From positions 285,794 through 349,793 of the IMG/VR virus record IMGVR_UViG_3300018080_000098: a stretch of 64,000 nucleotides of DNA. One strand, given 5' to 3'. The position numbers were made by a program, and so were the translations under genes. This document shows positions 43,031 to 63,596 of the stretch, one piece after another. Under the pieces are notes generated by a model. That model was not told the DNA's origin. It saw only the letters and a list, made by a program, of their open reading frames with translations, and ran no database searches. The number at the start of each line of letters is the position of its first letter. Position 1 is the first letter of the stretch.

Positions 43031-43659
43031 TAGACCCAGAACAATACAACCCAAATGTAAAAACCCCAAACATAACCAGAATATACAAGAGAACACAAAC
43101 AGCGAAAATAACACCAAAAGAACAAGTGGGATACAGTGGGACAAAGTGGGGAGAAGAGGGGAACATTGGGTTCCAGCCCCCTATACCCCTATATACCTCC
43201 TAAAAACCGTGTATTTCCGTGTATTTAGCCTATATAGGGCCCTATATACCCCATATTACAGGCCTTTTTGGCGATCAGATCCCCTGTTTTCCGTGTCTAC
43301 AGACCCTATTAGTCCACTATTACCCGCTCCCAACCCCTACAGATCCCCTATTACGGGTAGACTTAGTCCTATTTCTGCACCCAGATCCCCAACAAAAAAC
43401 ATGCCAATAAAAAGTAATAAATGTTTTCCTTGGCACTTGACATTGTATTGTTTGATCTGTTTTGTGCTTGGGGATCTATTATTTCCATTAAATCATGGTA
43501 ACTTTACATTGTCAAGTAAAAAATAAATTCTTTTTTCTGCGTAAGTGTGTTGACAACGTAAAGATCGTTGTTACGCGTACCCTGGTCTAATGGTTTAACC
43601 GAATACCGTAGGGGAAGGGGCTCCGGGAATTCCCGGAGCCCTGGGGGAGGGGACGCGGG

Positions 43660-43965
43660 CTAGTTGAACTGGCGGACGGGCGGACCGGCGTTGACGCAGA
43701 TGTATCGGTCCTCCTCCGGGACCTTCACTCCGCGCTCTTCGAGCCAAACCGCCAGGGCGTGCACAATGAACTTGAACGTTTCCGTCATCACGTGCAGATC
43801 GTTGTGGGGGCCTTCGGGAATCTGCCGACGCTTGATGATCAGCTTGATGGCCCTTTCCGTGGCCTTCTGCATGCCCGGCCGCTTGAGAGCATCCCTGATC
43901 TCCTGATCCCCGGCGTGCGCCGCGACCATCTTCCGGATCTTCCGGCAACGTTGCTTCAGAGTCAT
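43660..43965 (-). CDS. Hypothetical early-cassette protein
   Basis: AAAGGA RBS; own promoter/leader upstream. Confidence 0.65.
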   Translation of the reverse strand: MTLKQRCRKIRKMVAAHAGDQEIRDALKRPGMQKATERAIKLIIKRRQIPEGPHNDLHVMTETFKFIVHALAVWLEERGVKVPEEDRYICVNAGPPVRQFN

Positions 43966-44548
43966 TCACGTTCCTTTCGTTGACTGCGGTTTCCGTCGAC
44001 ACACCAAATATAATAACGCACAGCTGCATCGGCAACCCATTAAATGAAATATTTTTGACACACCACCCCAGGGGACCTTAGACTAGAACTAATGGTTTAA
44101 CCGAATACCCAGGATATAAAAAATCCCCGGGTGGCGAGAGTAGACCACCCGAGGAGAGGTCAACGGGGTGAACTGGGGTCCTTTCTTTTCCTGCGAACCC
44201 GGGCCCACCTGAATCGCAATCCGCGAAGCACCACCAGTCTCCGTTGGCTACCGGTCCGACGCGGTAACCCTGGCAGCGTTTCGCGAGCAACAGAACCAGA
44301 CAGGGAACGCGGCCACCAAAGGCCAATTGATCGTCGTGTTTCCTCTCTGCTCCTGTTCCGTCCGACCACTCAAAGATAAGTCGCCACCCGAAAAACGCAA
44401 GAGGGAAAAATGAGATATTTTTGACGCGCCGAAACGCGCCATTCGATTTAATTGAACGCGCGCCCGCGCACACGCGAGATTAGGAGTATTGGTTAAACCA
44501 ACTAGACAAGGTGACAGCCCAGAGCTCGAGCCCTGGGTGCCCCTTTGT

Positions 44549-44722
44549 CTACTCCTCTTCCAGCTTGACGCAGATGGAGATGAGGGTATCCCGATGGGTC
44601 ACGAGGTACTCGACCCCGTTTCTCTCGGGCAGCGGGATGATCGCGCCGAGCAGGTAATCGTCGCGCTTCTCTTTGAAAAGGGTACGGACGCTTTCGATAA
44701 CGTCCTTCAGTGCTTGGTCCAT
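44549..44722 (-). CDS. 57-aa hypothetical protein (not in ORF track)
   Basis: AAAGGAGG RBS; MDQALKDVIESVRTLFKEKRDDYLLG...KLEEE. Confidence 0.65.
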   Translation of the reverse strand: MDQALKDVIESVRTLFKEKRDDYLLGAIIPLPERNGVEYLVTHRDTLISICVKLEEE

Positions 44723-44736
44723 GGGACCTCCTTTGT

Positions 44737-45132
44737 TTAGCAGTAGACCTGACGCTTCAGGGCGTGCCAGTAGTTACGGTGGGCGTCCGCGGGGCGCTGG
44801 TAGCCCTTGCCGTGGCAACGGAAGCAGATACCACCGGGCCCCTTGGGTTGGCCGTTCTCGACCATGGTGACAAACTGCCCCGTACCCGCGCACCGTTTGC
44901 AGTGCCAGGACACCCGACGCGCGTACTTCACCCAGTCCTGGGGAGTGGGCTCAGTGACCCCGGCCTTTTCCATGAGCTTGCGCACTGCGGCGTCGAATTT
45001 CTCATTGGTGGGGTACTCGGCGGAGCCGGAGTAGGACACCTTGACGGTGTACTTACGCGCGGCGCGGTACGCCTTACGGCAGCCTTCATCCGTGGTGAGA
45101 TCGTATCCCTCGAATTTCGGCATTCTCGACAT
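44737..45132 (-). CDS. DnaJ-type Zn-finger-like protein
   Basis: CKRCAGTG and CFRCHGKG (CxxCxGxG) motifs. Confidence 0.7.
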   Translation of the reverse strand: MSRMPKFEGYDLTTDEGCRKAYRAARKYTVKVSYSGSAEYPTNEKFDAAVRKLMEKAGVTEPTPQDWVKYARRVSWHCKRCAGTGQFVTMVENGQPKGPGGICFRCHGKGYQRPADAHRNYWHALKRQVYC

Positions 45133-45141
45133 GGGGTACTC

Positions 45142-45357
45142 CTACCGGCACAGCCGGTGCGGGTCGTCGTTCGCCCGGCAGTTGATCCAGTTGCGCGGGT
45201 CCTCGGGCCGCGAGCGCACGTTGAGGTCCTCGTCCAGCTGGGGGATCAGGTCGCGCAGGACGTCGTTGGTCCGCTCGCGGTGCCTGAGCCACACCAGGAC
45301 GACCAGCTCCCGCTTGGCCTCACGCTTCTCCTCGTCCGTCATGTTGGGGTAGTGCAT
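45142..45357 (-). CDS. Hypothetical early-cassette protein
   Basis: Start moved to ATG 45357 (GGAG RBS). Confidence 0.65.
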   Translation of the reverse strand: MHYPNMTDEEKREAKRELVVLVWLRHRERTNDVLRDLIPQLDEDLNVRSRPEDPRNWINCRANDDPHRLCR

Positions 45358-45448
45358 GTGTGTTTCTCCGCTGCTAGGTGTTTCCGTCCGACTGCACACA
45401 AGGTAAGCACGCGCATTACATTGTCAAGAAACTTTTTTCAAAAATATT

Positions 45449-45649
45449 TCACGCGCCATGGTTAGCACCCTCCAACCATTCCTCTATTATCAAACGGGAA
45501 TACCATTTTCTTTCCCGGTCTTGTCGGCACTCCCACATAAAAGCGATCTGTTCCTCTATACTCCTACGCTCTAACCAATGAGGGCACACCTCGCAAGCGA
45601 TATGGTTCTCACCTAGGGGAAGGTTGTACGGGCAGGTGTTACAGGTCAT
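45449..45649 (-). CDS. Small Cys-rich protein
   Basis: CNTC...CEVC; ATGA-coupled. Confidence 0.55.
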   Translation of the reverse strand: MTCNTCPYNLPLGENHIACEVCPHWLERRSIEEQIAFMWECRQDRERKWYSRLIIEEWLEGANHGA

Positions 45650-45813
45650 TCGACTTCACCCGTAAGCAGAGCTCTCAGGTCTGCTTGTAGTTCACTAGCT
45701 ATAACTAGGTGTCTCTCGGTGGCCTGGGTATCCCCTTTGATGCACGCTGCTAGCGCGCGGTCTAGCTGAATCCGAACATTATCACTGTACCAGCGAATCA
45801 GATTGTTCCACAT
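45646..45813 (-). CDS. 55-aa hypothetical protein (not in ORF track)
   Basis: AAGGAGG RBS; MWNNLIRWYSDNVRIQ...LLTGEVE. Confidence 0.6.
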   Translation of the reverse strand: MWNNLIRWYSDNVRIQLDRALAACIKGDTQATERHLVIASELQADLRALLTGEVE

Positions 45814-45916
45814 GTTGCGCCTCCTTCATAAGAAGAACGCGCGTATGCGAAAAACCTGACAAGAAAAATGCGTGCCGGGGAGGGCTACTGGTTAAACCGA
45901 ATGGTAAGGGGAAGGG

Positions 45917-46090
45917 CTAGGCTGGGTCCTGCTGGACCTTACCCCGGCAGGCTTTTTTGCGCTGGGCGTTGCGCTTGTTGGGGTGGCGACCCGCGCCACT
46001 GCGCCACGAGGCGATCAGCGCGTAGGGGTTACGCTTAGCCTTCGTGGCCTTGCGCACGCGCCGCTGTTTTTTCTTTCGCCTACGTGCCAT
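45917..46090 (-). CDS. Small very basic protein
   Basis: Start moved to ATG 46090 (MARRRKKK); RNPYA motif. Confidence 0.55.
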   Translation of the reverse strand: MARRRKKKQRRVRKATKAKRNPYALIASWRSGAGRHPNKRNAQRKKACRGKVQQDPA

Positions 46091-46234
46091 GCGTACAATG
46101 TAGCAACGATGCTTTACTGCGTCAAGCGGCAACTAAAATATTTTGCACAGGATGTTAGGTTAAACCAATAAACACAGACAAAGAAAACCCGGAGCCGTGG
46201 CCCCGGGTATTAGGGAGGATAGGTTGCTAGTAGG

Positions 46235-46678
46235 TTACTGCGCCGTCTGGAGCGCCAACGAGGGGTCGATGACGGCGGCGACGACGAGGTATTTCCCTTT
46301 GACGGTCCCGAAGGACAGCAGGCCCAGCTTGGGGCGGTAGCCCAGAATACTGGTCACAGCCTGCATGGCGTGGTCCCCGGCGATTTTGCCGCGCTTTTCC
46401 TGATTGAGTACAACGATGGAGACGGAGGTTGTACTCCGCGACATGCAGCCCCGCGTGACCACGACGTAGGCGTGGCTGGTCTTGGCTTTCCCGAGCACCT
46501 TGCAGCGGGAGCTGAGCTTGCTCGGCTGGGCGGTCTGCGTTTTCTTGGGCTTGTGCGCCGTGGGGTTGTGCGTCTGCGCCGCGCAACCCGTTCCGAAAAG
46601 CAGGGAAACGAGAACGGCGAACAGCGCGCCCGCCGCCATCAGGGAAACCACTTGGCCTGCCTCTTTCAAATTGTCCAT
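46235..46678 (-). CDS. Membrane-anchored/lipoprotein-like early protein
   Basis: GGAGG RBS; hydrophobic helix ending GTGC. Confidence 0.65.
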   Translation of the reverse strand: MDNLKEAGQVVSLMAAGALFAVLVSLLFGTGCAAQTHNPTAHKPKKTQTAQPSKLSSRCKVLGKAKTSHAYVVVTRGCMSRSTTSVSIVVLNQEKRGKIAGDHAMQAVTSILGYRPKLGLLSFGTVKGKYLVVAAVIDPSLALQTAQ

Positions 46679-46836
46679 TGTTGCCTCCGCTCGCTAGTTG
46701 TTTCCGTCCGACTGCGAAAAAGATAATCACGCAACTTGACGCGGTCAAGTGACAAAATGAAATATTTTTTACGTGCATCCCCAGGGGCAGGGCTATCGGT
46801 TTAACCGAGTAGAGTACGGGGGCGCACCCCGTGCAG

Positions 46837-47022
46837 CTAAAGCCTCCTCTCCCAACTCGCATTGGGGGTGAACCAGATGCTTTCGTTGCCGCACGCGTTT
46901 CGGCGTGCCTCGGCTTCCGTCGAATATTCGGCAGCCTGTTGACGGTCGCTTGTGTAGGACCGCTCAGAGCCGGGACGCGCTACGTACTTTCCGTCACTTG
47001 TCCGCTTGATTACGTAGACCAT
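46837..47022 (-). CDS. Hypothetical early-cassette protein
   Basis: Start moved to ATG 47022 (MVYVIKRTSDGKY). Confidence 0.6.
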   Translation of the reverse strand: MVYVIKRTSDGKYVARPGSERSYTSDRQQAAEYSTEAEARRNACGNESIWFTPNASWERRL

Positions 47023-47023
47023 C

Positions 47024-47413
47024 CTAGTAGCACTCCGTCCAGTGCTCACCCGTCTCCTCGCCCCACTGGGAACGGGGCGCCAGAGCCTGCCCGGACATGT
47101 TGTAGTCCGTCTCGCACTCGTAGCAGGTGTTCGTGAACCGGGACAGTTCCACCTCTTCCCCACAGCTACACCGACCCACGCGGGGATGGCGGTAGGTCCA
47201 CTCCCGCTTGATGACCCCGCGGCAAACTACGTCAACCTCGCCGCATAAACACTTGCCAAAATTCTCGCGCGCCGCTGGGTGCATGGCGTCGATGTCCACG
47301 TTCCCGTCTTCGTCACAGTCGAACGTGAAACCCCAACCCCGATGCCCTCGGTAATCGAAGTCCAGCGTGTAGTCCACACCCGTCTCTTCGTAAGACTCCC
47401 TGATGATCTTCAT
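47024..47413 (-). CDS. Hypothetical protein with Cys pairs
   Basis: 129 aa; coupled to neighbours. Confidence 0.7.
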   Translation of the reverse strand: MKIIRESYEETGVDYTLDFDYRGHRGWGFTFDCDEDGNVDIDAMHPAARENFGKCLCGEVDVVCRGVIKREWTYRHPRVGRCSCGEEVELSRFTNTCYECETDYNMSGQALAPRSQWGEETGEHWTECY

Positions 47414-47414
47414 C

Positions 47415-47795
47415 TTAATACCCCATCACGTCGTTGTACCCGTCGCACCCGAAGGCCATCCCCGCCTGCATGGCCATCTCGTTATCCCAATCGGAATAAT
47501 CGACGGGCTGCGGGCTGAAAGATTTGATTCGGATTTCCCGATGCACGTCGGGACCGTCGAGCACCACGTACTCCGTGTCCTTGTTGGAACAGTAACCACC
47601 CTGCACCCGCTTCCCCGACTCGAGCTCCTCGACCACCTCCTTGAGATACGCCTCCGCCTCCTCCCGCGTGGCGAAAGCCGCACCCGCCCAACAGTCGTCA
47701 TCGGTGAAGGGCTCACTGCCCCACAGGTCCACCGTGTAGTCGGTGGGCTGAACGGGCTTGTTGACGGCGTTACGATCTTCGCGATAGGTATTCAT
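47415..47795 (-). CDS. Hypothetical early-cassette protein
   Basis: First gene behind promoter/leader at ~47817. Confidence 0.7.
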   Translation of the reverse strand: MNTYREDRNAVNKPVQPTDYTVDLWGSEPFTDDDCWAGAAFATREEAEAYLKEVVEELESGKRVQGGYCSNKDTEYVVLDGPDVHREIRIKSFSPQPVDYSDWDNEMAMQAGMAFGCDGYNDVMGY

Positions 47796-47922
47796 GTGTG
47801 TGACTCCGTGTGCGTTGTCCGTCCGACAAAAACAAGATAACCATGCAGCTTGACGGCGTCAAGTTTTTCCGCAAAATATTTTTGCGCGCCTGGTAGGGTT
47901 GTCGGTTTAACCAATAGACCAG

Positions 47923-47995
47923 GGTGCATGACGGAACTCGAATCCGCAACCTCCGGGACCACAACCCGGCGCTCTACCGATTGAGCTACATGCAC
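47923..47995 (-). tRNA. trnH: tRNA-His (GTG)
   Basis: Cloverleaf: acceptor GTGCATG/CATGCAC, anticodon arm CCGGG-TTGTGGT-CCCGG, T loop TTCGAGT; discriminator C; CCA and G-1 not encoded. Confidence 0.85.
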
Positions 47996-47996
47996 A

Positions 47997-48084
47997 TGGC
48001 AGGGGTAGGATTCGAACCTACGGTGGTACTCGTGGAGTGACTAGATTTACAGTCTAGCGCCTTCAACCTCTCGGCCACCCTGCC
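47997..48084 (-). tRNA. trnY: tRNA-Tyr (GTA)
   Basis: GGCAGGG acceptor, CTAGA-CTGTAAA-TCTAG anticodon arm, long variable arm, GGTTCGAATCC; CCA not encoded. Confidence 0.9.
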
Positions 48085-48090
48085 GAAAGT

Positions 48091-48170
48091 GCTTCGGGTA
48101 GGACTGAGCCCTTTTGTTGTCCTGTGGGAAGCTATCTCCACAGCCCTGTCAATTCAGAGCTACCCGAAGC
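48091..48170 (-). ncRNA. Structured RNA with 11-bp closing stem and internal hairpins, upstream of the tRNAs
   Basis: GCTTCGGGTAG/CTACCCGAAGC closing stem; internal TGTGG/CCACA and GGAC/GTCC stems. Confidence 0.45.
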
Positions 48171-48335
48171 TGTAGGGTTAAGGGAAGCGCTTCATAGGTT
48201 TCCCTCCACGCGGCCCTCTGAGTGCCCTACGTCACTGCCTCGTTAGGTCGTGGCCACTCCCTGTTTTTTGCTGGGACCATCCAGCTTCTTCGTGGGGTGG
48301 CGTCCCCACTAGCCTGTGGTTAGCAGGCACGTTCG

Positions 48336-48509
48336 TTACATCGGGATGACCAGCACCCCGCGCTTCTCTTCGTCCTGGGGAACGTCCTCGCGCTGCCCTT
48401 CGAGGTACTCCAGATACCTCGGATCGTAGACCTCCACTCGGGGCTGCGGGCGCTCACGTTCCGCGATCTCCTGAACCAGCTTCTCACTACGTCGCCAATC
48501 GATCAACAT
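48336..48509 (-). CDS. 57-aa hypothetical protein (not in ORF track)
   Basis: GGAG RBS behind leader; MLIDWRRSEKLVQEIAE...VIPM. Confidence 0.6.
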   Translation of the reverse strand: MLIDWRRSEKLVQEIAERERPQPRVEVYDPRYLEYLEGQREDVPQDEEKRGVLVIPM

Positions 48510-48596
48510 GATTCATCTCCGTGTGCTGTTTCCGTCCGACGTGAAAAATATAACAACGCGTCTTTACGTTGTCAAGAAACTTTTTCGCGCCCGGCG

Positions 48597-48809
48597 TCAA
48601 TGCACCTCTCGGTGAGGCCTCGACAGATGAGCGATGAGCGTGGCACAGCATAGCATGTTGATATGAACCTCGTCCAGCTGCTTGGCCAGCACCTTACGGG
48701 TAGCATCCGACATAGTCTCGGTCTTCAGCTTAGTGGCCAGATGCTCCACCCAACGGGAAGCCTGCTTCCCTTCCTTCATCAACAGTTCGATTGCTTCTTT
48801 GTGCGACAT
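48597..48809 (-). CDS. Hypothetical early-cassette protein
   Basis: Start moved to ATG 48809 (MSHKEA). Confidence 0.65.
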   Translation of the reverse strand: MSHKEAIELLMKEGKQASRWVEHLATKLKTETMSDATRKVLAKQLDEVHINMLCCATLIAHLSRPHREVH

Positions 48810-48933
48810 GAAATTTCTCCGTTTCCGTCCGACGCACACAAGGTAAGCACGGCACTTTACGCGGTCAAGTATTTTTCTGCAAAATATTTCGCGCGCTATC
48901 CTACGTATCGGTTAAACCGAGTAGCTGAATAGC

Positions 48934-48968
48934 GAAGGGGATCCGTCCACACAAAACGGATCCCCTTC
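48934..48968 (-). terminator. Intrinsic terminator-like hairpin
   Basis: GAAGGGGATCCGT/ACGGATCCCCTTC stem. Confidence 0.65.
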
Positions 48969-49038: not shown

Positions 49039-49046
49039 GTCCTTAG

Positions 49047-49707: not shown

Positions 49708-49714
49708 TCTAAAC

Positions 49715-56634: not shown

Positions 56635-56641
56635 TACCCCC

Positions 56642-57045: not shown

Positions 57046-57047
57046 GA

Positions 57048-57218: not shown

Positions 57219-57228
57219 TGGAACCACC

Positions 57229-58119: not shown

Positions 58120-58341
58120 TTCGCTTGCCTCCGATGCGGTTTGTTTTTTCCGTCCGACGAAACAAATATAAATTCGGCGCACAAAAAAGTCAATCAAATA
58201 TTTTTGACGCGCCGATTTTTTCGCGGGTATGCCTCCCTTCCCGCACGCACTCTATAATAGGTATACCCTACACTCTACCCCTCGAGCTCCCCGTTCGGTT
58301 TAACCATACGCCCTACCCCATACCCCTTGTCCACGTTGTTC

Positions 58342-58467
58342 GGTTTAACCAACAGACCTGCCGCGCCGCGCTGCGTCGAGCAGCCTTTATAGTCTATCCA
58401 GACCCGCCAGGAATATTTCGCACGCTGCCAAACGAATAGACTAAAGGGAATTTTGTATAGAGAGAAC
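58342..58467. repeat. Long conserved intergenic element C, copy 3
   Basis: Same blocks plus GGAATATTT.CACGCTGCC...GACTAAAGGGAA shared with copy 4. Confidence 0.8.
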
Positions 58468-58695
58468 CTACCCCTCCGGGTTGCTCCTATTACATCGACC
58501 GTTCATCGTCGAAGCCTCCCACCCCACCTCTTTGCGCTCGCGCCATTCTGCTACCGCTTTATCCACTTCGGCTTGTCGCTCCGGTGGAGGATCGGCATAG
58601 CGTTCCCTCGGTAGGATACAGTGGCACGTTGGCCCACAGCACCAACTGAATTTACACTGCTCGCAGTCATAGCGATAACGTGGTACGCGGTCCAT
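58468..58695 (-). CDS. Small Cys-rich protein
   Basis: CEQC...CCGPTCHC. Confidence 0.55.
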   Translation of the reverse strand: MDRVPRYRYDCEQCKFSWCCGPTCHCILPRERYADPPPERQAEVDKAVAEWRERKEVGWEASTMNGRCNRSNPEG

Positions 58696-58696
58696 T

Positions 58697-59179
58697 CTAC
58701 CACTCCCCCAGCCTACTTAGCTCCGTAGGATACACCCTGTCCTCCGGCAACGGGTAGTCCTCGTCCGACACGAACACGTAGCCCACCAGGCTAGTGTAGG
58801 GTGGGTTCCTGTCGTGGCTCCCGTCGTCCACCCACACTTCGTACAGTAGTACCTGCGGGTAGTCTTTCAACGGGCGCCGGGTCCTCGGCAGCACCACGTC
58901 GCCGCGTTCACTCTTGGGCTTGTCTAGTGGTCTGCTGTCCAACTCTAAGTCCAGGTCCCGAATGGTCCAGCCCTTGCCGTCGAACGCTCGCAGGTCCGTG
59001 GAAAATACACGAGCCACCCGGGGCGCCACGAGCGTAGGCTTTGTCACCGTGACCCGAGTAGGCAAGTACAGGTCCACAGGTAGCCGCATGAAAAACTGCG
59101 ACACCTTGGGGCACTGGAATTCCTCCAAGGGAATAAACTCTCCCAGCGTCACCGTGGGTTTGGGGTTGGGCTTCGGCAC
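58697..59179 (-). CDS. Hypothetical protein
   Basis: AAGGAG RBS; GTG start. Confidence 0.6.
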   Translation of the reverse strand: MPKPNPKPTVTLGEFIPLEEFQCPKVSQFFMRLPVDLYLPTRVTVTKPTLVAPRVARVFSTDLRAFDGKGWTIRDLDLELDSRPLDKPKSERGDVVLPRTRRPLKDYPQVLLYEVWVDDGSHDRNPPYTSLVGYVFVSDEDYPLPEDRVYPTELSRLGEW

Positions 59180-59189
59180 CGGCTACTCC

Positions 59190-59591
59190 TTATTTCAGTT
59201 CCGCCGTGGCACCCACGTTCTTGAGCGCCTTGACCAGCGCCAGCTTGCGACCACCCGAGAGCTTCTGGGTTCCCCGGAATTTGTTGTCCAGCTTTACCGG
59301 GGTACGTTCGGACAACTCCTTCGCCTCCTTCAGCCCAATCTCCAGGTGCTCACGCAGCGCCTTGATTACCTGGATTTTCTGTTGTCCGTGGTTTACCAGG
59401 ACAAGGCTTCCCATGATGGCGTTCTCTGCACCCTCCGGGTCCTTCACTGCTTCCGTGAACAGATGCAATACACAACGGCTCACCGTGATACCGTACATGT
59501 GATTCAGCGTACCTACCACCGCCATCGCTTCGCGCGGGGTTAGCGTGCTCAGTCCCTCGGCCAGCAGAGAAATCTTTTCCTTGTTTCGCAT
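59190..59591 (-). CDS. rplL: Ribosomal protein bL12 (L7/L12) homologue, copy 1
   Basis: NTD-like LSTLTPREAMAVV...YGITV; CTD QKIQVIKALREHLEIGLKEAKELSE; ends ALKNVGATAELK. Confidence 0.8.
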   Translation of the reverse strand: MRNKEKISLLAEGLSTLTPREAMAVVGTLNHMYGITVSRCVLHLFTEAVKDPEGAENAIMGSLVLVNHGQQKIQVIKALREHLEIGLKEAKELSERTPVKLDNKFRGTQKLSGGRKLALVKALKNVGATAELK

Positions 59592-59692
59592 TGTCTTTAG
59601 CTCCTGTGCGTTTTTCCGTCCGACGCAATCAAAAATATCAAACGCTCATTACGTTGTCAAGAAAAAAAAATCGGCGCGCGGCTTCGCCTTCA

Positions 59693-59715
59693 CTAGCTAG
59701 TTATTATCTAGCATC
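59693..59715 (+). promoter_or_regulatory. Conserved upstream motif of + strand gene (candidate phage-specific promoter), copy 1
   Basis: CTAGCTAGTTATTATCTAGCATC, near-identical to 63100-63122; both precede CAGGAG RBS and an MPAK start. Confidence 0.55.
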
Positions 59716-59739
59716 ACACCCACACAGGAGAACTCCCTT

Positions 59740-59989
59740 ATGCCTGCAAAAACGAATTAAAGTCAACGGGCAGACCTACATAGCTGCGGACGCCTACAGC
59801 CAGCAACTACTAGGAAACATCAAACAGACTATCAAGGAAGCACTCGACGCCTTCACTCTCTACAACGGGTATGCCTACGGGGCTCGAGCAGAGGAGCTAG
59901 ACGCAGGCCTTCGACAAGACCTGGAAGAAACCGAAAGCAACCTGCGCAATAAGCTAGACGCCCTCAAGAATCTCGCGGCTAGACTGTAG
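59740..59989 (+). pseudogene. GxxY-motif small gene interrupted by one extra A in an A5 run
   Basis: ATG CCT GCA AAA ACG AAT TAA; removing one A gives MPAKRIKVNGQTYIAAD..., parallel to 63146 MPAKHIQVNGHKY. Confidence 0.65.
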
Positions 59990-60013
59990 CCCTACCCCTT
60001 CCCCACGTTGTTC

Positions 60014-60137
60014 GGTTTAACCGTTCGTCCGGCTGCGCCGCGCTGCGTCGGGCAGCCTTTAGACTATCCAAACCCACAGGGAATATTTTTCACGCTGCCC
60101 AGCAGACAGACTAAAGGGAATTTTGTATAGAGAGAAG
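60014..60137. repeat. Long conserved intergenic element C, copy 4
   Basis: Near-identical to copy 3; lies where + and - genes converge. Confidence 0.8.
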
Positions 60138-60347
60138 CTGGTCTACCAACCTCTTCCAGTTCTCTATCCATTCTTTTTGTTCTTGCAGACATTCCTGACA
60201 GCGGTCCGTTTGGTCTATTTTCCCTCGACACAAAGGCTCACCGCACCTTGTTCCTCCGAGCAACTCAGGCAAAAATACCAGACGCCCAGCCTCGGGGACA
60301 AAGTCTTCGTACTTGAACCGCAGGTCCCTACCCCTTCTCCAGCCCAT
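60111..60347 (-). CDS. Hypothetical protein
   Basis: Start moved to ATG 60347; 3' end runs into element C. Confidence 0.45.
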   Translation of the reverse strand: MGWRRGRDLRFKYEDFVPEAGRLVFLPELLGGTRCGEPLCRGKIDQTDRCQECLQEQKEWIENWKRLVDQLLSIQNSL

Positions 60348-60597
60348 CGAGCAGCTTGTCCAGCACCACGTCGTGCATGAGCTTGCGGCGGATAGTGTAC
60401 CCCGAATCAAAACGAGTGTCCGCAAACTCTACCATGTTCACCATGCCCATGAACAACACCACGAAATCCTCGGTGGACATGCGCCGCAATACCCGGTCCA
60501 CGTACCAGTCCAGCCCGTAGTGGGAACTCTTCCCGTAACGCTCCTCGTCCTGAGCTTTGTCCTTCCGAGCCTGCTCTATGACTTCGCGGATAGTCAT
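60328..60597 (-). CDS. Hypothetical protein
   Basis: AGGA RBS; 89 aa. Confidence 0.6.
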   Translation of the reverse strand: MTIREVIEQARKDKAQDEERYGKSSHYGLDWYVDRVLRRMSTEDFVVLFMGMVNMVEFADTRFDSGYTIRRKLMHDVVLDKLLDGLEKG

Positions 60598-60609
60598 GGT
60601 TCCTACCTG

Positions 60610-60828
60610 CTACTCCTGCACGTGAAGACTACCCGCGAGCATCCCCCACAATTCGTCCAGCGTGACACCGGACTCCAAGATGTACTCCACTTGTTCGGTA
60701 AGCCCACCGTTGTTGATGGCGCTCGCTTCACCGGCTTTCAGGTCGTGGACAATCTCGTCCAGGTCCACAGACTCGCACCCGTCTGCCTCCAGCAGCTTGA
60801 CCACCCGGTCCAACTCTTTCGCGTCCAT
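60610..60828 (-). CDS. Hypothetical phage protein
   Basis: LDEIVHDLKAGEASAINNGGLTEQVEYI motif. Confidence 0.65.
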   Translation of the reverse strand: MDAKELDRVVKLLEADGCESVDLDEIVHDLKAGEASAINNGGLTEQVEYILESGVTLDELWGMLAGSLHVQE

Positions 60829-60831
60829 GAC

Positions 60832-60996
60832 TTACTCCTGCTCCTTTTTCTTTTGGAGCCCCACCCCTCCACACTTCGTGCAGCGGTCCACACCCTCCGG
60901 GTCTTTCAGACTCGAACCGTACCCGTCGCAGTGATCACAGAATTCGTACCCGTGAGCCTCGGGGTTCATCATTACGTCGAAGTCCAGAACTTTCAT
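60832..60996 (-). CDS. Small DnaJ-type Zn-finger-like protein
   Basis: Start moved to ATG 60996; CDHCDGYG and CTKCGGVG. Confidence 0.6.
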   Translation of the reverse strand: MKVLDFDVMMNPEAHGYEFCDHCDGYGSSLKDPEGVDRCTKCGGVGLQKKKEQE

Positions 60997-61077
60997 TTCC
61001 GTCTCTCCGTTTCGCAATTCGTGCGATCGAAAATATCAAACGCGCTTTACGCCGTCAAGAAAAAATTTCGCAAGCAG

Positions 61078-61518
61078 CTAAAAGTCGTGAACGTCCCCAC
61101 ACTCCGGACACGCCGCGCAAACCTCCGCACACACTATCCCGGTGTCCGGGTCGCAGTAGGGCAGCACTGTGTGCGCCGCTCCGCAACACTCGAACTCTCG
61201 ATACAACTCCGGTCCAGGTTCCGGGACCTCCCCGTAGCTGAACACAAACTGAGGGTTCACCACCGCGTACTCCCGACTGCCCCCGTCCTTCACCGAAGCG
61301 TGGGAACGGAAAGACTTGAGCGGACTCACCACCAACCGGCGTACCGTCCGGTTATACTCCCCCTCCTCGATCAGTGCCACGCGAGGTAAACTCGTCTCAC
61401 GCTCGTACCCCAGAACACACTCCCGACTGTACCCGTGAATAGTCGCGTGCCCATCCTCCCCCACCGTGAACGCTACCGTCCACACCGAATCAATCAGCCT
61501 CTTCGTTGCGTACCGCAT
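61078..61518 (-). CDS. Hypothetical protein
   Basis: AAGGAG RBS; C-terminal Cys cluster. Confidence 0.65.
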   Translation of the reverse strand: MRYATKRLIDSVWTVAFTVGEDGHATIHGYSRECVLGYERETSLPRVALIEEGEYNRTVRRLVVSPLKSFRSHASVKDGGSREYAVVNPQFVFSYGEVPEPGPELYREFECCGAAHTVLPYCDPDTGIVCAEVCAACPECGDVHDF

Positions 61519-61528
61519 CCGTCTCTCC

Positions 61529-61930
61529 TTACCTGAACTCCACCACCGCTCCTACACCCCGAAGCGCCTGCGCCAAAGCCAGCTTCCGCCGACCCGTCAA
61601 CTTCTCCCGATTCCGGTACTTGTTCCCCAGTACCACAGGGACCGCCTCCGACAAGTCCTTGGCTTCCTTCAGCCCGATCTCCAGATGCTCCCGCAGCACC
61701 TTGATCACCTGGATCTTCCGCTCCCCATACCCCACCAGCATCAGCTTCCCCACTACCGCCTCCGCTGACCCCTCCGGATCCTGCGCAGCCTCCCCCAGCA
61801 GATGCACCACACAACGACTCACCGTGAGCCCATACGTGTGGTTCATCGTTCCCACCACAGCCATCGCCTCGCGAGGCGTCAACGTGCTCAACGCCTCCGC
61901 CAACAAAGAAATCTTTTCGTGGTTACGCAT
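61529..61930 (-). CDS. rplL: Ribosomal protein bL12 (L7/L12) homologue, copy 2
   Basis: Paralogue of 59190-59591; RKIQVIKVLREHLEIGLKEAKDLSE; ends ALRGVGAVVEFR. Confidence 0.8.
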   Translation of the reverse strand: MRNHEKISLLAEALSTLTPREAMAVVGTMNHTYGLTVSRCVVHLLGEAAQDPEGSAEAVVGKLMLVGYGERKIQVIKVLREHLEIGLKEAKDLSEAVPVVLGNKYRNREKLTGRRKLALAQALRGVGAVVEFR

Positions 61931-62011
61931 CGCTCTAGCTCCTGTTGTTTCCGTCCGACGCGATCAAAAATATCAAATCAACTTGACGCTGTCAAGAAAA
62001 AATTTCGGCGG

Positions 62012-62533
62012 CTACTTCTCTTCTTTCCTTAACCGCAACACACCTTCTCCACCCGGGTCTACGCCCGCAGTGACACTCACCACAGACTCCACCCCTACCG
62101 TGTCCCCGTCCCAATACTCACAGTTGTCCGCGTGAGCTACCAGCGTAGCCCGAGTATCCTTGTCGAGAATATCCTGCACGCTATCAGCTTCCACGTAGAA
62201 CTCGACTTCCTCGACCACCGTCCGCTGCATCTTGACCAAGTAGACCTTGCGCTTGTCGTACTCCGTCCCGTCCGCGCAGACTACTTTCTCCAGAGTCTTC
62301 GACGTGCCTGCCCCTATCAGCTGCACCCCAACCTCCGGATTGTCCGCGTGTACCGAAATAGCAGACCCCTCCCGACCCGCTATCCTCTGTGCCAAACTGC
62401 GCGCAGTCTCCAGAGCTTCCACATGGGTAGGGATACTATCCTCGTACAGTTGCCACTCAGGCTTGTACGCTCGGTAAATACCCACCACCCAAAAAGACCC
62501 TCGGTGTTTTACGTGAACTTCCACAGCAGCCAT
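62012..62533 (-). CDS. Hypothetical protein
   Basis: AGGAG RBS; 173 aa. Confidence 0.65.
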   Translation of the reverse strand: MAAVEVHVKHRGSFWVVGIYRAYKPEWQLYEDSIPTHVEALETARSLAQRIAGREGSAISVHADNPEVGVQLIGAGTSKTLEKVVCADGTEYDKRKVYLVKMQRTVVEEVEFYVEADSVQDILDKDTRATLVAHADNCEYWDGDTVGVESVVSVTAGVDPGGEGVLRLRKEEK

Positions 62534-62542
62534 TGGCTTCTC

Positions 62543-62995
62543 CTACGCCCAAAGACTCTTGAGCTTCGTCTTCCGCGCCCGCAGGTACACCCCCCGCCCC
62601 ATGGCGAACCCGGAATAAATATCTCCCTCGAACTCGAAGCGAAGGTAGGTCCGCTCGCCCCCGAAGTTGTCGCGGCACTCGTTCAGAATGTTCACCCTGG
62701 CCGACAGTACCCCACCGGGCCAGTTGGTCACACTCTTCCCGTCACTCGACAGGTAAGCGAACACCCTACCCGTCTCCTGAATGTGAGCCTTCTCTCTTTC
62801 CGTTGCACACTCGTAGCAGAACGTCTCCCCCGTCTCCGGGTTCTCCCCGTACCCCGTGGTCATCGGCATACCGTGGGGATGCAGATGTCTCGGTGCGCTC
62901 GGCTTGTGTCCGCAGTCCAGCTTCCGCGCGTAGTACGCATCGGCAAAGTTCTGCGCGAACAGGCTACGTCTCTCTTCTTCACTCGTGTTGTGCAT
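62543..62995 (-). CDS. Hypothetical phage protein
   Basis: Start moved to ATG 62995; FCYECA, AYLSSDGKSVTNWPG motifs. Confidence 0.7.
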   Translation of the reverse strand: MHNTSEEERRSLFAQNFADAYYARKLDCGHKPSAPRHLHPHGMPMTTGYGENPETGETFCYECATEREKAHIQETGRVFAYLSSDGKSVTNWPGGVLSARVNILNECRDNFGGERTYLRFEFEGDIYSGFAMGRGVYLRARKTKLKSLWA

Positions 62996-63099
62996 TTTCT
63001 CGCTCCACTGTTTCCGTCCAACAAATCGAATATAAATCGCCGCGCCGCGTTTGTCAATCAAATATTTTTCACGCACCGATTTTTTGCGGCTCACCTTCC

Positions 63100-63122
63100 C
63101 TAGATAGTTATTCTCTAGCATC
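63100..63122 (+). promoter_or_regulatory. Conserved upstream motif of + strand gene, copy 2
   Basis: CTAGATAGTTATTCTCTAGCATC. Confidence 0.55.
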
Positions 63123-63145
63123 GTACACCAACAGGAGCATTTATC

Positions 63146-63409
63146 ATGCCTGCGAAACATATTCAGGTCAACGGCCACAAGTATCAACTCGTTACCGCAG
63201 ACCAGGACGAGCTAAACGCACTGCGCCAGCAATTAGAGCGCCACAAAAAACAGGCGAAAGAAATGTTCTTCGCCCTCGGCTACATCATATCGTGGATAGT
63301 AAAAGACGAGGTCGCCCCCAAGGTAGGAGAAGAAGTAGCGAAGGATATAAGGAGTAGGCTGGAGAGTATCAGAAACAACCTACGTTCATTAGGGTGGCCG
63401 TCCGGATAA
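63146..63409 (+). CDS. Small GxxY-motif protein on the + strand within the early region
   Basis: CAGGAG RBS; MPAKHIQVNGHKYQLVTA. Confidence 0.7.
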   Translation: MPAKHIQVNGHKYQLVTADQDELNALRQQLERHKKQAKEMFFALGYIISWIVKDEVAPKVGEEVAKDIRSRLESIRNNLRSLGWPSG

Positions 63410-63462
63410 CCCCTCAAGCTCCATCCCTACCCCCTGAGCGTACACCCACCTCCCCGTCGTTC

Positions 63463-63596
63463 GGTTTAACCATTCGTCCCGCTGCGCCGCGGCGCATCGA
63501 AGCAGCTCACCAACCCTTTAGACTATCCAGATGCGACAACAATATTTTTGAAGGTGCGAAGCGGTTAGACTATCCACAATTTTGTATAGAGAGAAC
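63463..63596. repeat. Long conserved intergenic element C, copy 5
   Basis: GGTTTAACC...GCTGCGCCGC...CCTTTAGACTATCCAGAT...TAGACTATCCA...TTTTGTATAGAGAGAAC. Confidence 0.75.

What the first reader, a model, noticed from the sequence alone, without database searches (positions are those of the whole stretch)
43592..63471. Twenty-five GGTTWAACC palindromes marking cassette junctions
Seen: one site (sometimes two) between each terminator and the next promoter, in both orientations, against about 0.15 expected by chance in 20 kb. Several read GTTAGGTTTAACC or GTTCGGTTTAACC. The core contains GTTAAAC/GTTTAAC, which fit the GTTRRRY/RYYYAAC integron core consensus, but no attC-type long hairpin or integrase is in the window. 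Inference: a binding site for a dimeric phage protein (repressor, insulator or DNA-entry/organisation factor), or a recombination site that shuffles cassettes.
Basis: partly seen in the sequence, partly recalled or inferred. Interest (0 to 1): 0.65.

Follow-up and report, generated by a model that had tools for sequence, protein, structure and literature searches.

The report
Palindromic operator array in jumbo phage
A 350-kb uncultured phage carries the same short palindrome in the untranscribed gap at the head of about 25-30 small early transcription units. This is most likely an array of docking sites for a phage-encoded dimeric DNA-binding protein, with a ParB/KorB-like CTP switch as the best candidate, and not an integron-like recombination site.

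Summary
GGTTWAACC occurs 25 times in the window (0.4 expected) and 30 times in the complete 349,793-bp phage genome. All copies are intergenic and lie in one ~40-kb arc of minus-strand mini-operons. Each sits after a terminator hairpin and 32-210 bp before a sigma-70-like promoter.

The site is really a 13-bp odd palindrome (T-Y-GGTT-W-AACC-R-A). At orthologous junctions in relatives the 8 fixed core bases are invariant while the flanks are only 41-57% identical. A relative with 60% polymerase identity has 23 copies in the same layout. More distant relatives carry GGCT-W-AGCC, GGTA-W-TACC or GGGA-W-TCCC in the equivalent position.

The complete genome has no tyrosine or serine recombinase and the sites have no attC-like hairpin, so the integron reading fails. 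An orphan ParB/Spo0J/KorB-family protein is encoded 4.5 kb upstream of the arc. It has intact CTP motifs, an HTH domain and a predicted C-terminal dimer, and no ParA partner. Its recognition helix is shared by the two phages with GGTT sites and differs in the two with GGGA sites.

Best reading: operator or loading sites for coordinate control of early units. This is KorB/OB-like, and binding is unproven. Rival binders include a neighbouring ribbon-helix-helix protein.

The parts
43592..43600 (.). site 1 (last in the direction of transcription)
   Evidence: Upstream stop to site 59 nt. The next called start is 1474 nt away, with a promoter-like TTGTCA/TTGACA just downstream.
44094..44102 (.). 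site 2
   Evidence: A T-rich terminator at 44124-44155(-) lies 21 nt upstream. Site to next start 128 nt.
44491..44499 (.). site 3
   Evidence: Stop to site 49 nt. Shares a 583-nt intergenic region with site 2.
45890..45898 (.). site 4
   Evidence: Site to next start 76 nt, the shortest such distance.
46158..46166 (.). site 5, the exemplar junction
   Evidence: Terminator at 46187-46208(-) upstream. A/T-rich element, then -35 TTGACG and -10 TACATT at 46125-46097(-) downstream.
46798..46806 (.). site 6
   Evidence: Stop to site 217 nt, site to start 119 nt. -35 is 49 nt downstream.
47904..47912 (.). site 7, directly after the tRNA pair
   Evidence: tRNA-His 47922-47995(-) and tRNA-Tyr 47997-48084(-) lie just upstream. 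-35 is 41 nt downstream.
48910..48918 (.). site 8
   Evidence: Site to start 100 nt, -35 is 41 nt downstream.
49359..49367 (.). site 9
   Evidence: Shares a 905-nt gene-free stretch with site 8. A T-rich terminator lies upstream.
50289..50297 (.). site 10
   Evidence: Stop to site 155 nt, site to start 142 nt. Hairpin dG -24 ends 15 nt upstream.
51322..51330 (.). site 11
   Evidence: Intergenic region of 191 nt: 55 nt to the upstream stop and 127 nt to the next start.
52093..52101 (.). site 12
   Evidence: Intergenic region of 183 nt. Hairpin dG -31 with a T-rich tail ends 12 nt upstream.
52529..52537 (.). site 13
   Evidence: Intergenic region of 177 nt. The leader block lies 94 nt downstream.
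53318..53326 (.). site 14
   Evidence: Intergenic region of 215 nt. The leader block lies 141 nt downstream.
53897..53905 (.). site 15
   Evidence: Intergenic region of 171 nt. The hairpin ends 3 nt upstream of the site.
54447..54455 (.). site 16
   Evidence: Intergenic region of 204 nt. Terminator-like hairpin at 54463-54485(-).
55008..55016 (.). site 17, second exemplar junction
   Evidence: Terminator at 55033-55060(-), -35/-10 at 54915-54888(-), leader block at 54872-54881(-), gene 54500-54850(-).
55683..55691 (.). site 18 (double site, downstream member)
   Evidence: Lies 43 bp from site 19 in the same 466-nt intergenic region.
55726..55734 (.). site 19 (double site, upstream member)
   Evidence: Preceded by the long conserved unit: CTCTATACAAA at 55825, a GGATAGTCTA repeat and a GC hairpin.
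56458..56466 (.). site 20 (double site, downstream member)
   Evidence: Lies 52 bp from site 21 in a 407-nt intergenic region.
56510..56518 (.). site 21 (double site, upstream member)
   Evidence: Preceded by the long conserved unit with CTCTATACAAA at 56619.
58297..58305 (.). site 22 (double site, downstream member)
   Evidence: Lies 45 bp from site 23. A strong promoter (TTGACT-17-TATATT) is 103 nt downstream.
58342..58350 (.). site 23 (double site, upstream member)
   Evidence: Preceded by the long conserved unit with CTCTATACAAA at 58452.
60014..60022 (.). site 24
   Evidence: A possible plus-strand ORF (59654-59989) converges on it from the other side. The intergenic region is 736 nt.
63463..63471 (.). 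site 25
   Evidence: The plus-strand ORF 63146-63409 converges on it. The long conserved unit lies upstream, with CTCTATACAAA at 63581.
54872..54881 (-). example of the conserved leader block RTCGGAYGGA just after the -10
   Evidence: 19 copies on the minus strand of the window. 24 of the 26 genome copies lie in the arc, and 18 of those 24 have a site in the same intergenic region.
43592..64000 (-). window part of the ~40-kb arc of minus-strand mini-operons that holds every site
   Evidence: Own hexamer gene caller, negative GC skew and promoter/terminator scan. The arc runs on into genome positions 1-20156, outside the window. The candidate reader genes also lie outside the window: ParB-like at genome 24650-25519(-) and RHH at genome 23943-24317(-).

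Best explanation
GGTTWAACC is the core of a 13-bp odd palindrome (T-Y-GGTT-W-AACC-R-A). It serves as an operator or loading site for a phage-encoded symmetric dimer. One or two copies sit in the untranscribed gap at the head of each terminator-bounded early transcription unit, after the previous unit's hairpin and 32-210 bp upstream of a sigma-70-like promoter with an A/T-rich UP-like element.

The most likely reader is the orphan ParB/Spo0J/Noc/KorB-family protein encoded 4.5 kb upstream of the arc (genome 24650-25519, minus strand). It has intact CTP-binding motifs, an HTH domain and a C-terminal dimerisation domain, and no ParA partner.

By analogy with KorB on its distal OB operators, the protein would load at the sites as a CTP-gated clamp and reach the adjacent promoters, switching the ~25-30 early units together. 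Shut-off is the more likely direction; VirB-like anti-silencing is the alternative. Placing the sites in non-transcribed gaps keeps RNA polymerase from stripping the loader off.

Shown here: the sites, their placement, symmetry, conservation and type-switching, and the protein's family, motifs and predicted dimer.

Inferred: that this protein binds these sites, that it slides, and the direction of the effect.

My estimates: about 0.85 that this is a selected protein-binding element, and about 0.5 that the binder is the ParB-like protein given that.
For: Non-randomness and placement:
- 25 sites against 0.4 expected.
- 30 of 30 genome sites lie in one arc and all are intergenic.
- Each sits between a hairpin and a promoter.
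- Promoters in short intergenic regions without a terminator lack the site, so it marks unit boundaries and is not a core promoter element.

Symmetry: positions -6/+6 are T/A in 22/30 G000 copies and A/T in 21/23 and 19/23 G001 copies. In G001, +5/+6 lie outside the adjacent conserved block and still mirror -5/-6.

Selection: at four orthologous comparisons (G000 vs L110 three times, vs L030 once) all 8 fixed core bases are identical while the +/-100-nt flanks are 41-57% identical. G001, with polymerase 60% identical, has 23 copies in one 30-kb minus-strand arc with the same layout.

Specificity switching: each relative has a single enriched GGNN-W-NNCC type. The types are TT in G000, G001, L110 and L030; CT in L114; TA in L115; GA in L124 and L125.

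Candidate reader:
- Pfam ParB_N at 1.9e-12.
- phmmer to Spo0J 1vz0 at 1e-11 across the N-domain (GERR motif) and the HTH, plus hits to ParB-CTP, Noc and KorB structures.
- AF2 model with pLDDT 82.8 superposes on the ParB-parS complex, Spo0J and KorB with target TM-scores of 0.67-0.70.
- Homodimer prediction: ipSAE 0.52 against a best control of 0.00. At that mark 20/30 solved homodimers and 1/23 solved monomers pass. Runs agree in at least 94% of contacts, partner pLDDT is at least 77, and the interface is residues 222-280.
- No ParA-type ATPase in the genome.
- The gene is clade-specific (22 homologues) and sits in a conserved block just upstream of the arc.

Helix and site type: the recognition helix is S-x-G-W-V-D-Q-M-x-T in both GGTT phages, which are only 49% identical overall, and W-V-E-Q-R-R-V in L124 (GGGA sites). 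L125 has the L124-type helix and was predicted to carry GGGA. It has exactly one GGNN-W-NNCC in 15.6 kb, and that one is TA-GGGATTCCC-TA, intergenic.

Precedent: KorB's OB operators lie 4-10 bp or 45 to more than 1000 bp upstream of promoters, and KorB reaches them as a CTP clamp (PMC11790492).
Against: - No binding data of any kind exist.
- The invariant core is 9 bp (13 bp with the softer flanks), which is shorter than the 16-bp parS/OB.
- The helix/site correlation rests on two helix types and is confounded by phylogeny.
- L188 (ParB 41% identical) shows no such palindrome within 8 kb of its ParB gene. L122 and L123 show none within 4-10 kb.
- In G001, L114 and L115 a second, asymmetric conserved block (YTYRCGCGTWAC...) abuts the palindrome and remains unexplained.
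- A ribbon-helix-helix protein encoded two genes from the ParB gene is an equally natural reader of a compact palindrome.
- Six leader-type promoters in the arc have no site, so control cannot be strictly one site per promoter.
- 'Early' is inferred from promoter type only. There is no expression data, and no RNA runs were found.
Confidence: 0.45

Rival explanations
1. The element is the same kind of thing, an operator for a symmetric dimer that coordinates early units, but a different protein reads it. Candidates are the conserved 134-aa ribbon-helix-helix protein two genes downstream of the ParB gene (genome 23943-24317, minus strand), an unrecognised arc-encoded ORFan, or a host factor.
For: - The RHH domain (TacA1/CopG-like) scores above the Pfam cutoff in the L120 and L123 orthologues.
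- Orthologues are present in G000, G001, L110 and L120-L123.
- From general knowledge of the RHH family (MetJ, Arc, CopG): these proteins are obligate dimers that read short symmetric sites of about the size of the 9-bp core.
- Most proteins of this phage have no family match, so unrecognised DNA binders are likely.
- G000 and G001 come from similar samples and could share a host.
Against: - No RHH orthologue is detectable in L124 or L125, which still have palindromic sites.
- The RHH beta-strand (T/A-x-S-x-R) is nearly constant wherever the protein is found, so it offers no correlate for type switching.
- A host factor would not readily explain four or five site types among related phages, nor the parallel change in the phage ParB helix.
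Confidence: 0.3
2. The junction modules are PeSL-like mobile regulatory cassettes. Repeated terminator-plus-early-promoter units would act mainly as portable homology for recombination that shuffles ORFan cassettes, and the palindrome would simply be their best-conserved part.
For: - The composition matches PeSLs: a stem-loop plus an early promoter at cassette borders in a hyperplastic region (PMC2839356, PMC4122927).
- The G000 and G001 arcs share few genes, and those are in scrambled order.
- G001 junctions share exact words of up to 47 nt, with 79 pairs at 20 nt or more.
- One indel boundary between G000 and L110 lies ~60 nt upstream of a site.
Against: - G000 junctions share only short exact words: median 10 nt, maximum 24, none of 30 or more.
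- Passive homology does not explain an invariant 9-mer inside diverged flanks, two-fold symmetry, or switching of the inner dinucleotide between phages.
- Shuffling also occurs inside cassettes.
- The other boundary of the indel is not at a site.
- No rearranged contigs were found.
Confidence: 0.1
3. The site is a site-specific recombination site, integron-like or otherwise, at which a dedicated recombinase excises and inserts cassettes.
For: - One reading of the core (GTTAAAC) fits GTTRRRY.
- The sites bound cassette-like units.
- Double sites exist.
Against: - The complete genome has no Phage_integrase and no Resolvase match, while the control genomes rang.
- No attC-type imperfect long hairpin accompanies the sites.
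- Arms of 4 bp around a single base are too short for known tyrosine or serine recombinase core sites (general knowledge).
- The GGTTTAACC reading, 20 of 30 copies on the plus strand, does not fit GTTRRRY.
Confidence: 0.03
4. The site is a core promoter element for a phage sigma factor or a divergent promoter, or a target for DNA modification or nicking directed by the neighbouring methyltransferase and ParB pair.
For: - The phage encodes a sigma-70-family protein, and relative L115 encodes two in its arc.
- In G001 the opposite strand reads A/T-rich, TTGAC, 12 nt, TGGTAAC..., palindrome, which looks loosely promoter-like.
- A Methyltransf_23 gene sits next to the ParB gene across the clade.
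- ParB-fold/methyltransferase associations are common in phages (PMC12704722).
- ParB-like activators of phage T-dioxygenases exist (PMC13229309).
Against: - A palindrome with a free centre is atypical for a promoter element.
- The distance to start codons varies from 76 to 1474 nt.
- In G001 the unit occurs in both orientations relative to the genes.
- The implied -35/-10 spacer is only 15-16 nt.
- The dioxygenase-linked ParBs lack a DNA-binding domain, whereas this one has an HTH.
- No Tet_JBP match was found, but that control was silent, so this is weak.
- A modification target would not be confined to 30 intergenic gaps.
Confidence: 0.07

Closest known systems
KorB with its OB operators (plus KorA) on IncP plasmid RK2
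   Same: A ParB-family CTPase with an HTH acts as a global transcription regulator through a dozen or more palindromic operators placed at variable distances upstream of promoters (4-10 bp, or 45 to more than 1000 bp; PMC11790492). Here the sites lie 32-210 bp upstream of -35. The candidate protein matches KorB structures, and one clade member hits the Pfam KorB domain.
   Different: The setting is a lytic-looking 350-kb phage, not a plasmid. There is no ParA/IncC partner and no recognised KorA-like clamp lock. The core is shorter (9-13 bp) and there are ~30 sites confined to one 40-kb arc, each in a terminator-to-promoter gap. Binding and sliding are untested.
Chromosomal and plasmid ParB-parS, and Noc-NBS
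   Same: The protein has the same architecture: N-terminal CTP-binding domain with GERR and ENLxRE motifs, an HTH, and a C-terminal dimer. The sites are clustered palindromes near the gene. Like Noc, the protein has no ParA partner.
   Different: The sites are not 16-bp parS or NBS sequences. Their strict placement at the heads of transcription units points to regulation and not to segregation or membrane tethering. No N-terminal ParA-interaction motif is seen.
VirB of Shigella (a ParB-family, CTP-dependent anti-silencer)
   Same: A ParB-like protein acts on transcription from sites well upstream of promoters (cited within PMC12704722). The A/T-rich promoter-upstream elements here could be targets of host silencers.
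   Different: VirB controls a handful of virulence promoters against H-NS. Nothing here shows silencing or anti-silencing, and the direction of any effect is unknown.
PeSLs (promoter-early stem-loop cassettes) of T4-type phages
   Same: Composite terminator-plus-early-promoter repeats at the borders of ORFan cassettes in hyperplastic regions, with scrambled gene content between relatives (PMC2839356, PMC4122927).
   Different: PeSLs act through extended sequence identity between copies, whereas G000 junctions share at most 24 identical bases. PeSLs have no reported invariant palindrome that switches type between phages. This phage is unrelated to the T4 group.
Stoperators of cluster A mycobacteriophages (L5 gp71 repressor sites)
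   Same: From my own knowledge: about 24-30 copies of a 13-bp site in short intergenic gaps across a phage genome, read by one phage protein, with site and protein co-evolving between related phages.
   Different: Stoperators are asymmetric, are oriented with transcription, lie throughout both genome arms of temperate phages, and block elongation in lysogens. Here the site is a palindrome in untranscribed gaps of one arc, and the phage shows no integrase or partition ATPase.
Integron attC sites with the GTTRRRY core
   Same: They bound gene cassettes, and GTTAAAC fits the 7-base core.
   Different: There is no integrase, no attC hairpin and no attI/Pc arrangement. Every cassette has its own promoter and terminator, and the other reading of the palindrome does not fit the core.

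Membership tests
ParB/KorB-type protein plus palindromic operator system | Protein with a ParB N-terminal CTPase fold that keeps the arginine-patch (GERR) and ENLxRE-type motifs | tested here: met
   Pfam ParB_N at 1.9e-12. The alignment to Spo0J shows iaGERRiRA. The motifs are invariant across the 11-member clade alignment.
ParB/KorB-type protein plus palindromic operator system | Central helix-turn-helix DNA-binding domain | tested here: met
   The phmmer alignment to Spo0J 1vz0 runs over residues 32-199 and includes the HTH. Foldseek aligns ~200 columns to the ParB-parS complex, Spo0J and KorB with target TM-scores of 0.67-0.70.
ParB/KorB-type protein plus palindromic operator system | C-terminal dimerisation | tested here: met
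   Prediction only. ipSAE 0.52 against a best control of 0.00. At that mark 20/30 solved homodimers and 1/23 solved monomers pass. Runs agree in at least 94% of contacts and partner pLDDT is at least 77. The interface is symmetric, at residues 222-280. The pass may partly reflect the model's memory of ParB-family dimers.
ParB/KorB-type protein plus palindromic operator system | Multiple palindromic sites clustered on the same replicon near the gene | tested here: met
   30 copies of a 13-bp palindrome begin 4.5 kb downstream of the gene. In L124 one site lies directly after the ParB gene.
ParB/KorB-type protein plus palindromic operator system | The protein binds these sites specifically, with CTP-dependent clamp closure and sliding | not testable with these tools
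   There is only a correlation: the recognition helix is the same in the two GGTT phages and different in the two GGGA phages.
ParB/KorB-type protein plus palindromic operator system | ParA-type partner ATPase (needed for the partition role) | tested here: not met
   No AAA_31 or CbiA match in the complete genome, while the controls rang in 14/14 genomes. A partition system is therefore unlikely; an orphan regulator of the Noc or VirB type remains possible.
PeSL mobile regulatory cassettes | Composite stem-loop terminator plus early promoter between cassettes of a hyperplastic region | tested here: met
   for the architecture, for the scrambled gene content.
PeSL mobile regulatory cassettes | Copies alike enough over tens of bases to support homologous recombination | tested here: not met
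   In G000 the longest shared exact word has median 10 nt and maximum 24 nt, with none of 30 or more. G001 partly meets the feature, with a maximum of 47 nt.
PeSL mobile regulatory cassettes | Indel and replacement breakpoints between close relatives fall at the modules | tested here: inconclusive
   Only one resolvable indel between G000 and L110. One boundary is ~60 nt from a site and the other is not at a site. Contigs of other samples are identical where they overlap.
Integron (attC/IntI) | Tyrosine recombinase IntI | tested here: not met
   No Phage_integrase match in the 100%-complete genome, while the control rang in 14/14 genomes. No Resolvase match either.
Integron (attC/IntI) | attC: an imperfect 57-141-nt palindrome with R''/L''-L'/R' boxes at each cassette end | tested here: not met
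   The junctions hold ordinary terminator hairpins of 14-44 nt at variable distance from the site, and no paired inverse core sites.
Integron (attC/IntI) | Promoterless cassettes expressed from a common Pc | tested here: not met
   Most units carry their own sigma-70-like promoter and leader block.
Stoperator/repressor system (cluster A mycobacteriophages) | An asymmetric site oriented with transcription in a temperate phage | tested here: not met
   The site is a palindrome. In G001 the adjacent block occurs in both orientations. No integrase or partition ATPase was found.

The most novel reading that the evidence does not exclude
A clade of uncultured jumbo phages has co-opted an orphan ParB-family CTP clamp as the master switch or organiser of its host-takeover region. 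About 30 dedicated loading sites each sit in the untranscribed gap at the head of an early unit. The half-site specificity has switched repeatedly between related phages (GGTT, GGCT, GGTA, GGGA, perhaps GGTG). Each phage would then control only its own early genes, giving an immunity-like private code that could also act on co-infecting relatives.
Probability: 0.3. Interest if true: 0.8.

Novelty: new variant of a known kind. Interest (0 to 1): 0.62.

Why it matters
If the ParB-like protein reads these sites, this would be a phage using the ParB/KorB CTP-clamp mechanism for genome-wide temporal control of early genes, with no role in segregation. It would come with a ready-made natural series of specificity switches linking a recognition helix to half-site bases.

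It would give a concrete, testable handle on how a very divergent 350-kb phage organises dozens of ORFan host-takeover genes. It would also extend the short list of long-range bacterial-type regulators (KorB, VirB).

Tried and rejected
Searches that found nothing useful:
- The arc and a large protein against cultured phages (INPHARED): no match. The best polymerase hit is 27% identical.
- PHROG and Pfam scans of large and arc proteins: almost nothing.
- Literature search for the 9-mer: only primers and unrelated oligonucleotides.
- IMG/VR scans with the 296-aa arc protein, the G001 extended block, the AAA+ alignment and the ParB alignment: only G000's own fragment and G001.
- Metagenome scan with the AAA+ alignment: mostly distant family members, with only L030 informative.
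- Bacterial and archaeal genome scan with the ParB alignment: one unrelated ParB.
- Rfam on the arc: only the two tRNAs.

Read-level test for cassette circles or rearrangements: only Logan contigs were available. The joints reported in the source run are self-matches between repeated junction modules within one colinear 61.5-kb contig, and the other runs gave identical short pieces. This is uninformative and not negative.

Ideas rejected:
- Roadblock-assisted termination: the gap from hairpin to site ranges from 0 to 44 nt, so in some junctions a bound protein would stop RNA polymerase before the hairpin is transcribed.
- An RNA-level role: the site lies between terminator and promoter, and a 4-bp stem with a 1-nt loop cannot fold.
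- Avoidance of the 9-mer in the other 309 kb: about 2.4 would be expected and 0 were seen, which is not significant.
- Tet_JBP search: no match, but the controls were silent, so it carries no weight.

None of the contigs handled was taken to be human DNA. L061 is a microbial contig from a gut metagenome and was not used beyond a motif count.

Full report
**1. The observation**

GGTTWAACC occurs 25 times in the window, at exactly the positions listed. The expectation from dinucleotide shuffles is 0.40, and no shuffle gave more than 3.

The window is the last 64 kb of a single 349,793-bp viral record that IMG/VR and CheckV class as complete with direct terminal repeats. The whole genome holds 30 copies. 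The other five lie at genome positions 5882-20156, so all 30 form one ~40-kb arc across the contig junction, and the remaining ~309 kb has none.

A self-trained hexamer gene caller puts every gene of the arc on the minus strand and every site in an intergenic region.

**2. Anatomy**

Read in the direction of transcription, a typical junction has these parts in order:
- the stop codon of the previous unit;
- a GC-rich hairpin, with a T-tract in some junctions, ending 0-44 nt before the site;
- the site itself;
- a G-rich stretch;
- an A/T-rich UP-like element;
- a sigma-70-like -35 (TTGACN) and -10;
- a conserved leader block, RTCGGAYGGA;
- the ribosome-binding site and start codon.

Of the 24 leader-type promoters in the arc, 18 have a site in the same intergenic region, mostly 86-148 nt upstream of the leader. 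The six without a site sit mostly in 81-115-nt gaps with no room for a terminator. The site therefore marks terminator-bounded unit borders and is not a core promoter element.

The upstream half of the arc has a longer conserved unit in front of the site and three double sites 43-52 bp apart.

Lying between terminator and promoter, the site is essentially untranscribed, so it must act as DNA.

**3. Symmetry**

The central base is free: T in 20 copies and A in 10 on the plus strand. The flanks are symmetric out to position 6: T at -6 in 22/30 copies and A at +6 in 22/30, with Y and R at -5 and +5. The unit is a 13-bp odd palindrome, which is what a two-fold symmetric dimer reads.

**4. Relatives**

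The phage is very divergent. Its large proteins have no PHROG or Pfam match apart from a PolA-UDG fusion, and the best polymerase hit among cultured phages is 27% identical.

*G001.* IMG/VR holds a 260-kb relative (G001) with 60% polymerase identity. It has 23 copies of the same 9-mer, all within 19,965-49,804. They again lie between minus-strand mini-operons, after hairpins and before sigma-70-like promoters. Its flanks differ from G000's. Positions -6/-5 and +5/+6 read A-G and C-T, still mirror images of each other. An asymmetric conserved block, CTCACGCGTTACCA, abuts the palindrome; it faces the promoter in 19 copies and is inverted in 4. The distance from site to -35 in G001 falls at about 58, 68, 78 or 88 nt in 15 of 19 cases.

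*Orthologous junctions.* A relative at about 80% protein identity (L110) has three sites syntenic with G000's 20156, 16914 and 12993, and fragment L030 has the middle one. In these four comparisons all 8 fixed core bases are identical while the +/-100-nt flanks are only 41-57% identical. The -35 and -10 are the only other conserved islands. This is a phylogenetic footprint.

**5. Site-type switching**

More distant relatives have no GGTTWAACC in the equivalent region but carry another odd palindrome of the same form in the same position:
- GGCT-W-AGCC, five copies in L114;
- GGTA-W-TACC, four copies in L115; in both L114 and L115 the palindrome is followed by the same kind of adjacent block as in G001;
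- GGGA-W-TCCC, three copies in L124 and one in L125, with palindromic flanks;
- a single GGTG-A-CACC in L113, at the orthologous first junction.

In a table of all 16 possible inner dinucleotides, each phage has exactly one enriched type. Uniformity within a genome combined with switching between genomes is the signature of a cis site co-evolving with its reader.

**6. Candidate readers**

*No recombinase.* The complete genome has no tyrosine integrase and no serine recombinase, while the control genomes rang.

*The ParB-like protein.* The genome encodes a 289-aa ParB_N protein 4.5 kb upstream of the first site in the direction of transcription.
- Its sequence aligns to Spo0J across the N-domain, including the GERR motif, and the HTH. 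It also hits ParB-CTP, Noc and KorB structures.
- An AF2 model (pLDDT 82.8) superposes on the ParB-parS complex, Spo0J and KorB with target TM-scores of 0.67-0.70.
- A homodimer prediction passes: ipSAE 0.52 against a best control of 0.00. At that mark 20 of 30 solved homodimers and 1 of 23 solved monomers pass. Runs agree in at least 94% of contacts and partner pLDDT is at least 77. The interface is symmetric, at residues 222-280. This shows likeness to ParB-family dimers; it is not a measurement.
- No ParA-type ATPase is present, so the protein is an orphan, like Noc or VirB.
- It belongs to a narrow clade of 22 proteins, found only in phage-like contigs, in a conserved block of BrxL-like ATPase, methyltransferase, ParB, RHH protein, AAA+ and DUF7227, followed by the arc.
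- Its recognition helix is S-x-G-W-V-D-Q-M-x-T in both G000 and G001, which are 49% identical overall and both have GGTT sites. It is W-V-E-Q-R-R-V in L124, which has GGGA sites.
- L125 has the L124-type helix, so I predicted GGGA sites there. Its only GGNN-W-NNCC in 15.6 kb is TA-GGGATTCCC-TA, and it is intergenic.
- This correlation is small and confounded by phylogeny. L188 and L122/L123 show no such sites within 4-10 kb of their ParB genes. In G001 the nearest site is also ~10 kb from the ParB gene.

*The RHH protein.* A 134-aa ribbon-helix-helix protein is encoded two genes downstream of the ParB gene. It has orthologues in G000, G001, L110 and L120-L123, with a constant beta-strand, but none is detectable in L124 or L125.

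**7. Mechanism proposed**

The array is a set of operator or loading sites through which one phage protein, most likely the orphan ParB/KorB-like CTP switch, acts on ~25-30 early units together.

The closest working model is KorB. Its OB operators lie 4-10 bp or 45 to more than 1000 bp upstream of promoters, and KorB reaches the promoters as a CTP-gated sliding clamp (PMC11790492). VirB provides the opposite direction of effect.

Siting the element in the only untranscribed stretch of each unit border would protect the nucleation complex from transcribing polymerase. It would also explain why promoters without an upstream terminator have no site.

Shown: sections 1 to 5, and the protein's family membership. 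Inferred: binding, sliding, and the direction of the effect.

**8. Recombination readings**

The junctions resemble T4-type PeSLs in composition, and the arcs are hyperplastic: G000 and G001 share few genes there, in scrambled order, including within cassettes.

Against this as the primary function:
- G000 junctions share at most 24 identical bases.
- Only one boundary of the one resolvable indel between G000 and L110 lies near a site.
- Contigs from four runs in separate studies (sediment and seawater metagenomes) show no rearranged form. That test cannot see rare molecules.

Incidental recombination between modules, especially in G001, remains possible as a side effect.

**9. Verdict**

The integron idea is rejected. 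The idea of a dimeric phage protein site is supported, and it now has a specific, testable candidate. I rate the finding a new variant of a known kind, an operator array of the ParB/KorB type in a jumbo phage's early region, and moderately to highly interesting. The binder is unproven.

Noticed in passing
window 55825, 56619, 58452, 60122, 63581 (minus strand); also genome 6003, 20285, 21552, 31630, 32320: An 11-12-nt block, CTCTATACAAA(A), occurs 10 times and only on the minus strand, directly after stop codons. The same block is found after stops in relatives (L114, L123, L188, G001). It may be a second promoter class, for example for the phage sigma factor, or a processing or termination signal.
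   Followed up: partly
window 44357-61950, 19 copies on the minus strand (e.g. 54872-54881): A conserved leader block, RTCGGAYGGA(AAC), lies just after the -10 of the arc's promoters. 24 of the 26 genome copies are in the arc. G001 has a different but equally conserved leader (CGGCGGGAGAAAC). This is the initially transcribed region, and its function is unknown.
   Followed up: partly
window 46735, 47849, 49279, 61982: Several -35 hexamers are embedded in perfect 15-bp palindromes, CTTGAC-NNN-GTCAAG. Related forms (TTGACAACGTAAAG) recur in both G000 and G001. This may be a second operator overlapping the -35, or back-to-back -35 elements.
   Followed up: no
L023/L024 (G001 19965-49804): In G001 the distance from the palindrome to the -35 falls at about 58, 68, 78 or 88 nt in 15 of 19 junctions (binomial p about 1.5e-5 against a 0.3 chance). 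This is helical-turn phasing. It could reflect face-of-helix constraints, or 10-nt indels in duplicated A/T-rich spacers.
   Followed up: partly
L023 (G001), L114, L115: An asymmetric conserved block (YTYRCGCGTWAC...) abuts the palindrome in G001, L114 and L115. It stays similar while the palindrome type changes, and in G001 it is inverted together with its TTGAC partner in 4 of 23 copies. It is absent in this form from G000 and remains unexplained.
   Followed up: partly
window 47922-47995 and 47997-48084 (minus strand): tRNA-His(GTG) and tRNA-Tyr(GTA) form their own 'cassette' in the arc, immediately upstream of site 47904.
   Followed up: yes
window 63901-64000 and genome 1-110: Tandem 18-bp repeats, CCCGAGCATCCCCGTACA, lie at both contig ends, and the ends overlap by ~100 nt. 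This is the 'direct terminal repeat' that makes the record count as complete. The repeats sit inside the arc.
   Followed up: partly
window 42118-43592 and 48919-49714: Two gene-free stretches next to sites, of 1.47 kb and ~0.8 kb, have promoter-like elements but no confident ORF and no Rfam match. They may hold unannotated small genes or novel RNAs.
   Followed up: partly
window 63146-63409(+), 59654-59989(+); genome 5201-5863(+), 8699-8947(+): A few plus-strand ORFs, one of 220 aa with a good coding score, run against the arc's direction, and each ends within ~20-55 nt of a site. Those sites therefore sit between convergent genes. The ORFs have no family matches.
   Followed up: partly
genome 60096-63086 (L004:96-3086, minus strand): The DNA polymerase is a 996-aa fusion of a uracil-DNA-glycosylase-superfamily domain, a 3'-5' exonuclease and a family A polymerase.
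   Followed up: no
L120-L125 and genome ~24-30 kb: A BrxL-like (BREX Lon-like) ATPase and a Methyltransf_23 protein are conserved just upstream of the ParB-like gene across the clade. The phage also encodes a 481-aa sigma-70-family protein (genome 157233-158678), and relative L115 has two in its arc.
   Followed up: no
L001:16574-16900 and L030:~1900-2050: Downstream of site 16914 both G000 and L030 contain a small unannotated ORF with a conserved CPDCGA (zinc-ribbon-like) motif. My gene caller missed it.
   Followed up: no
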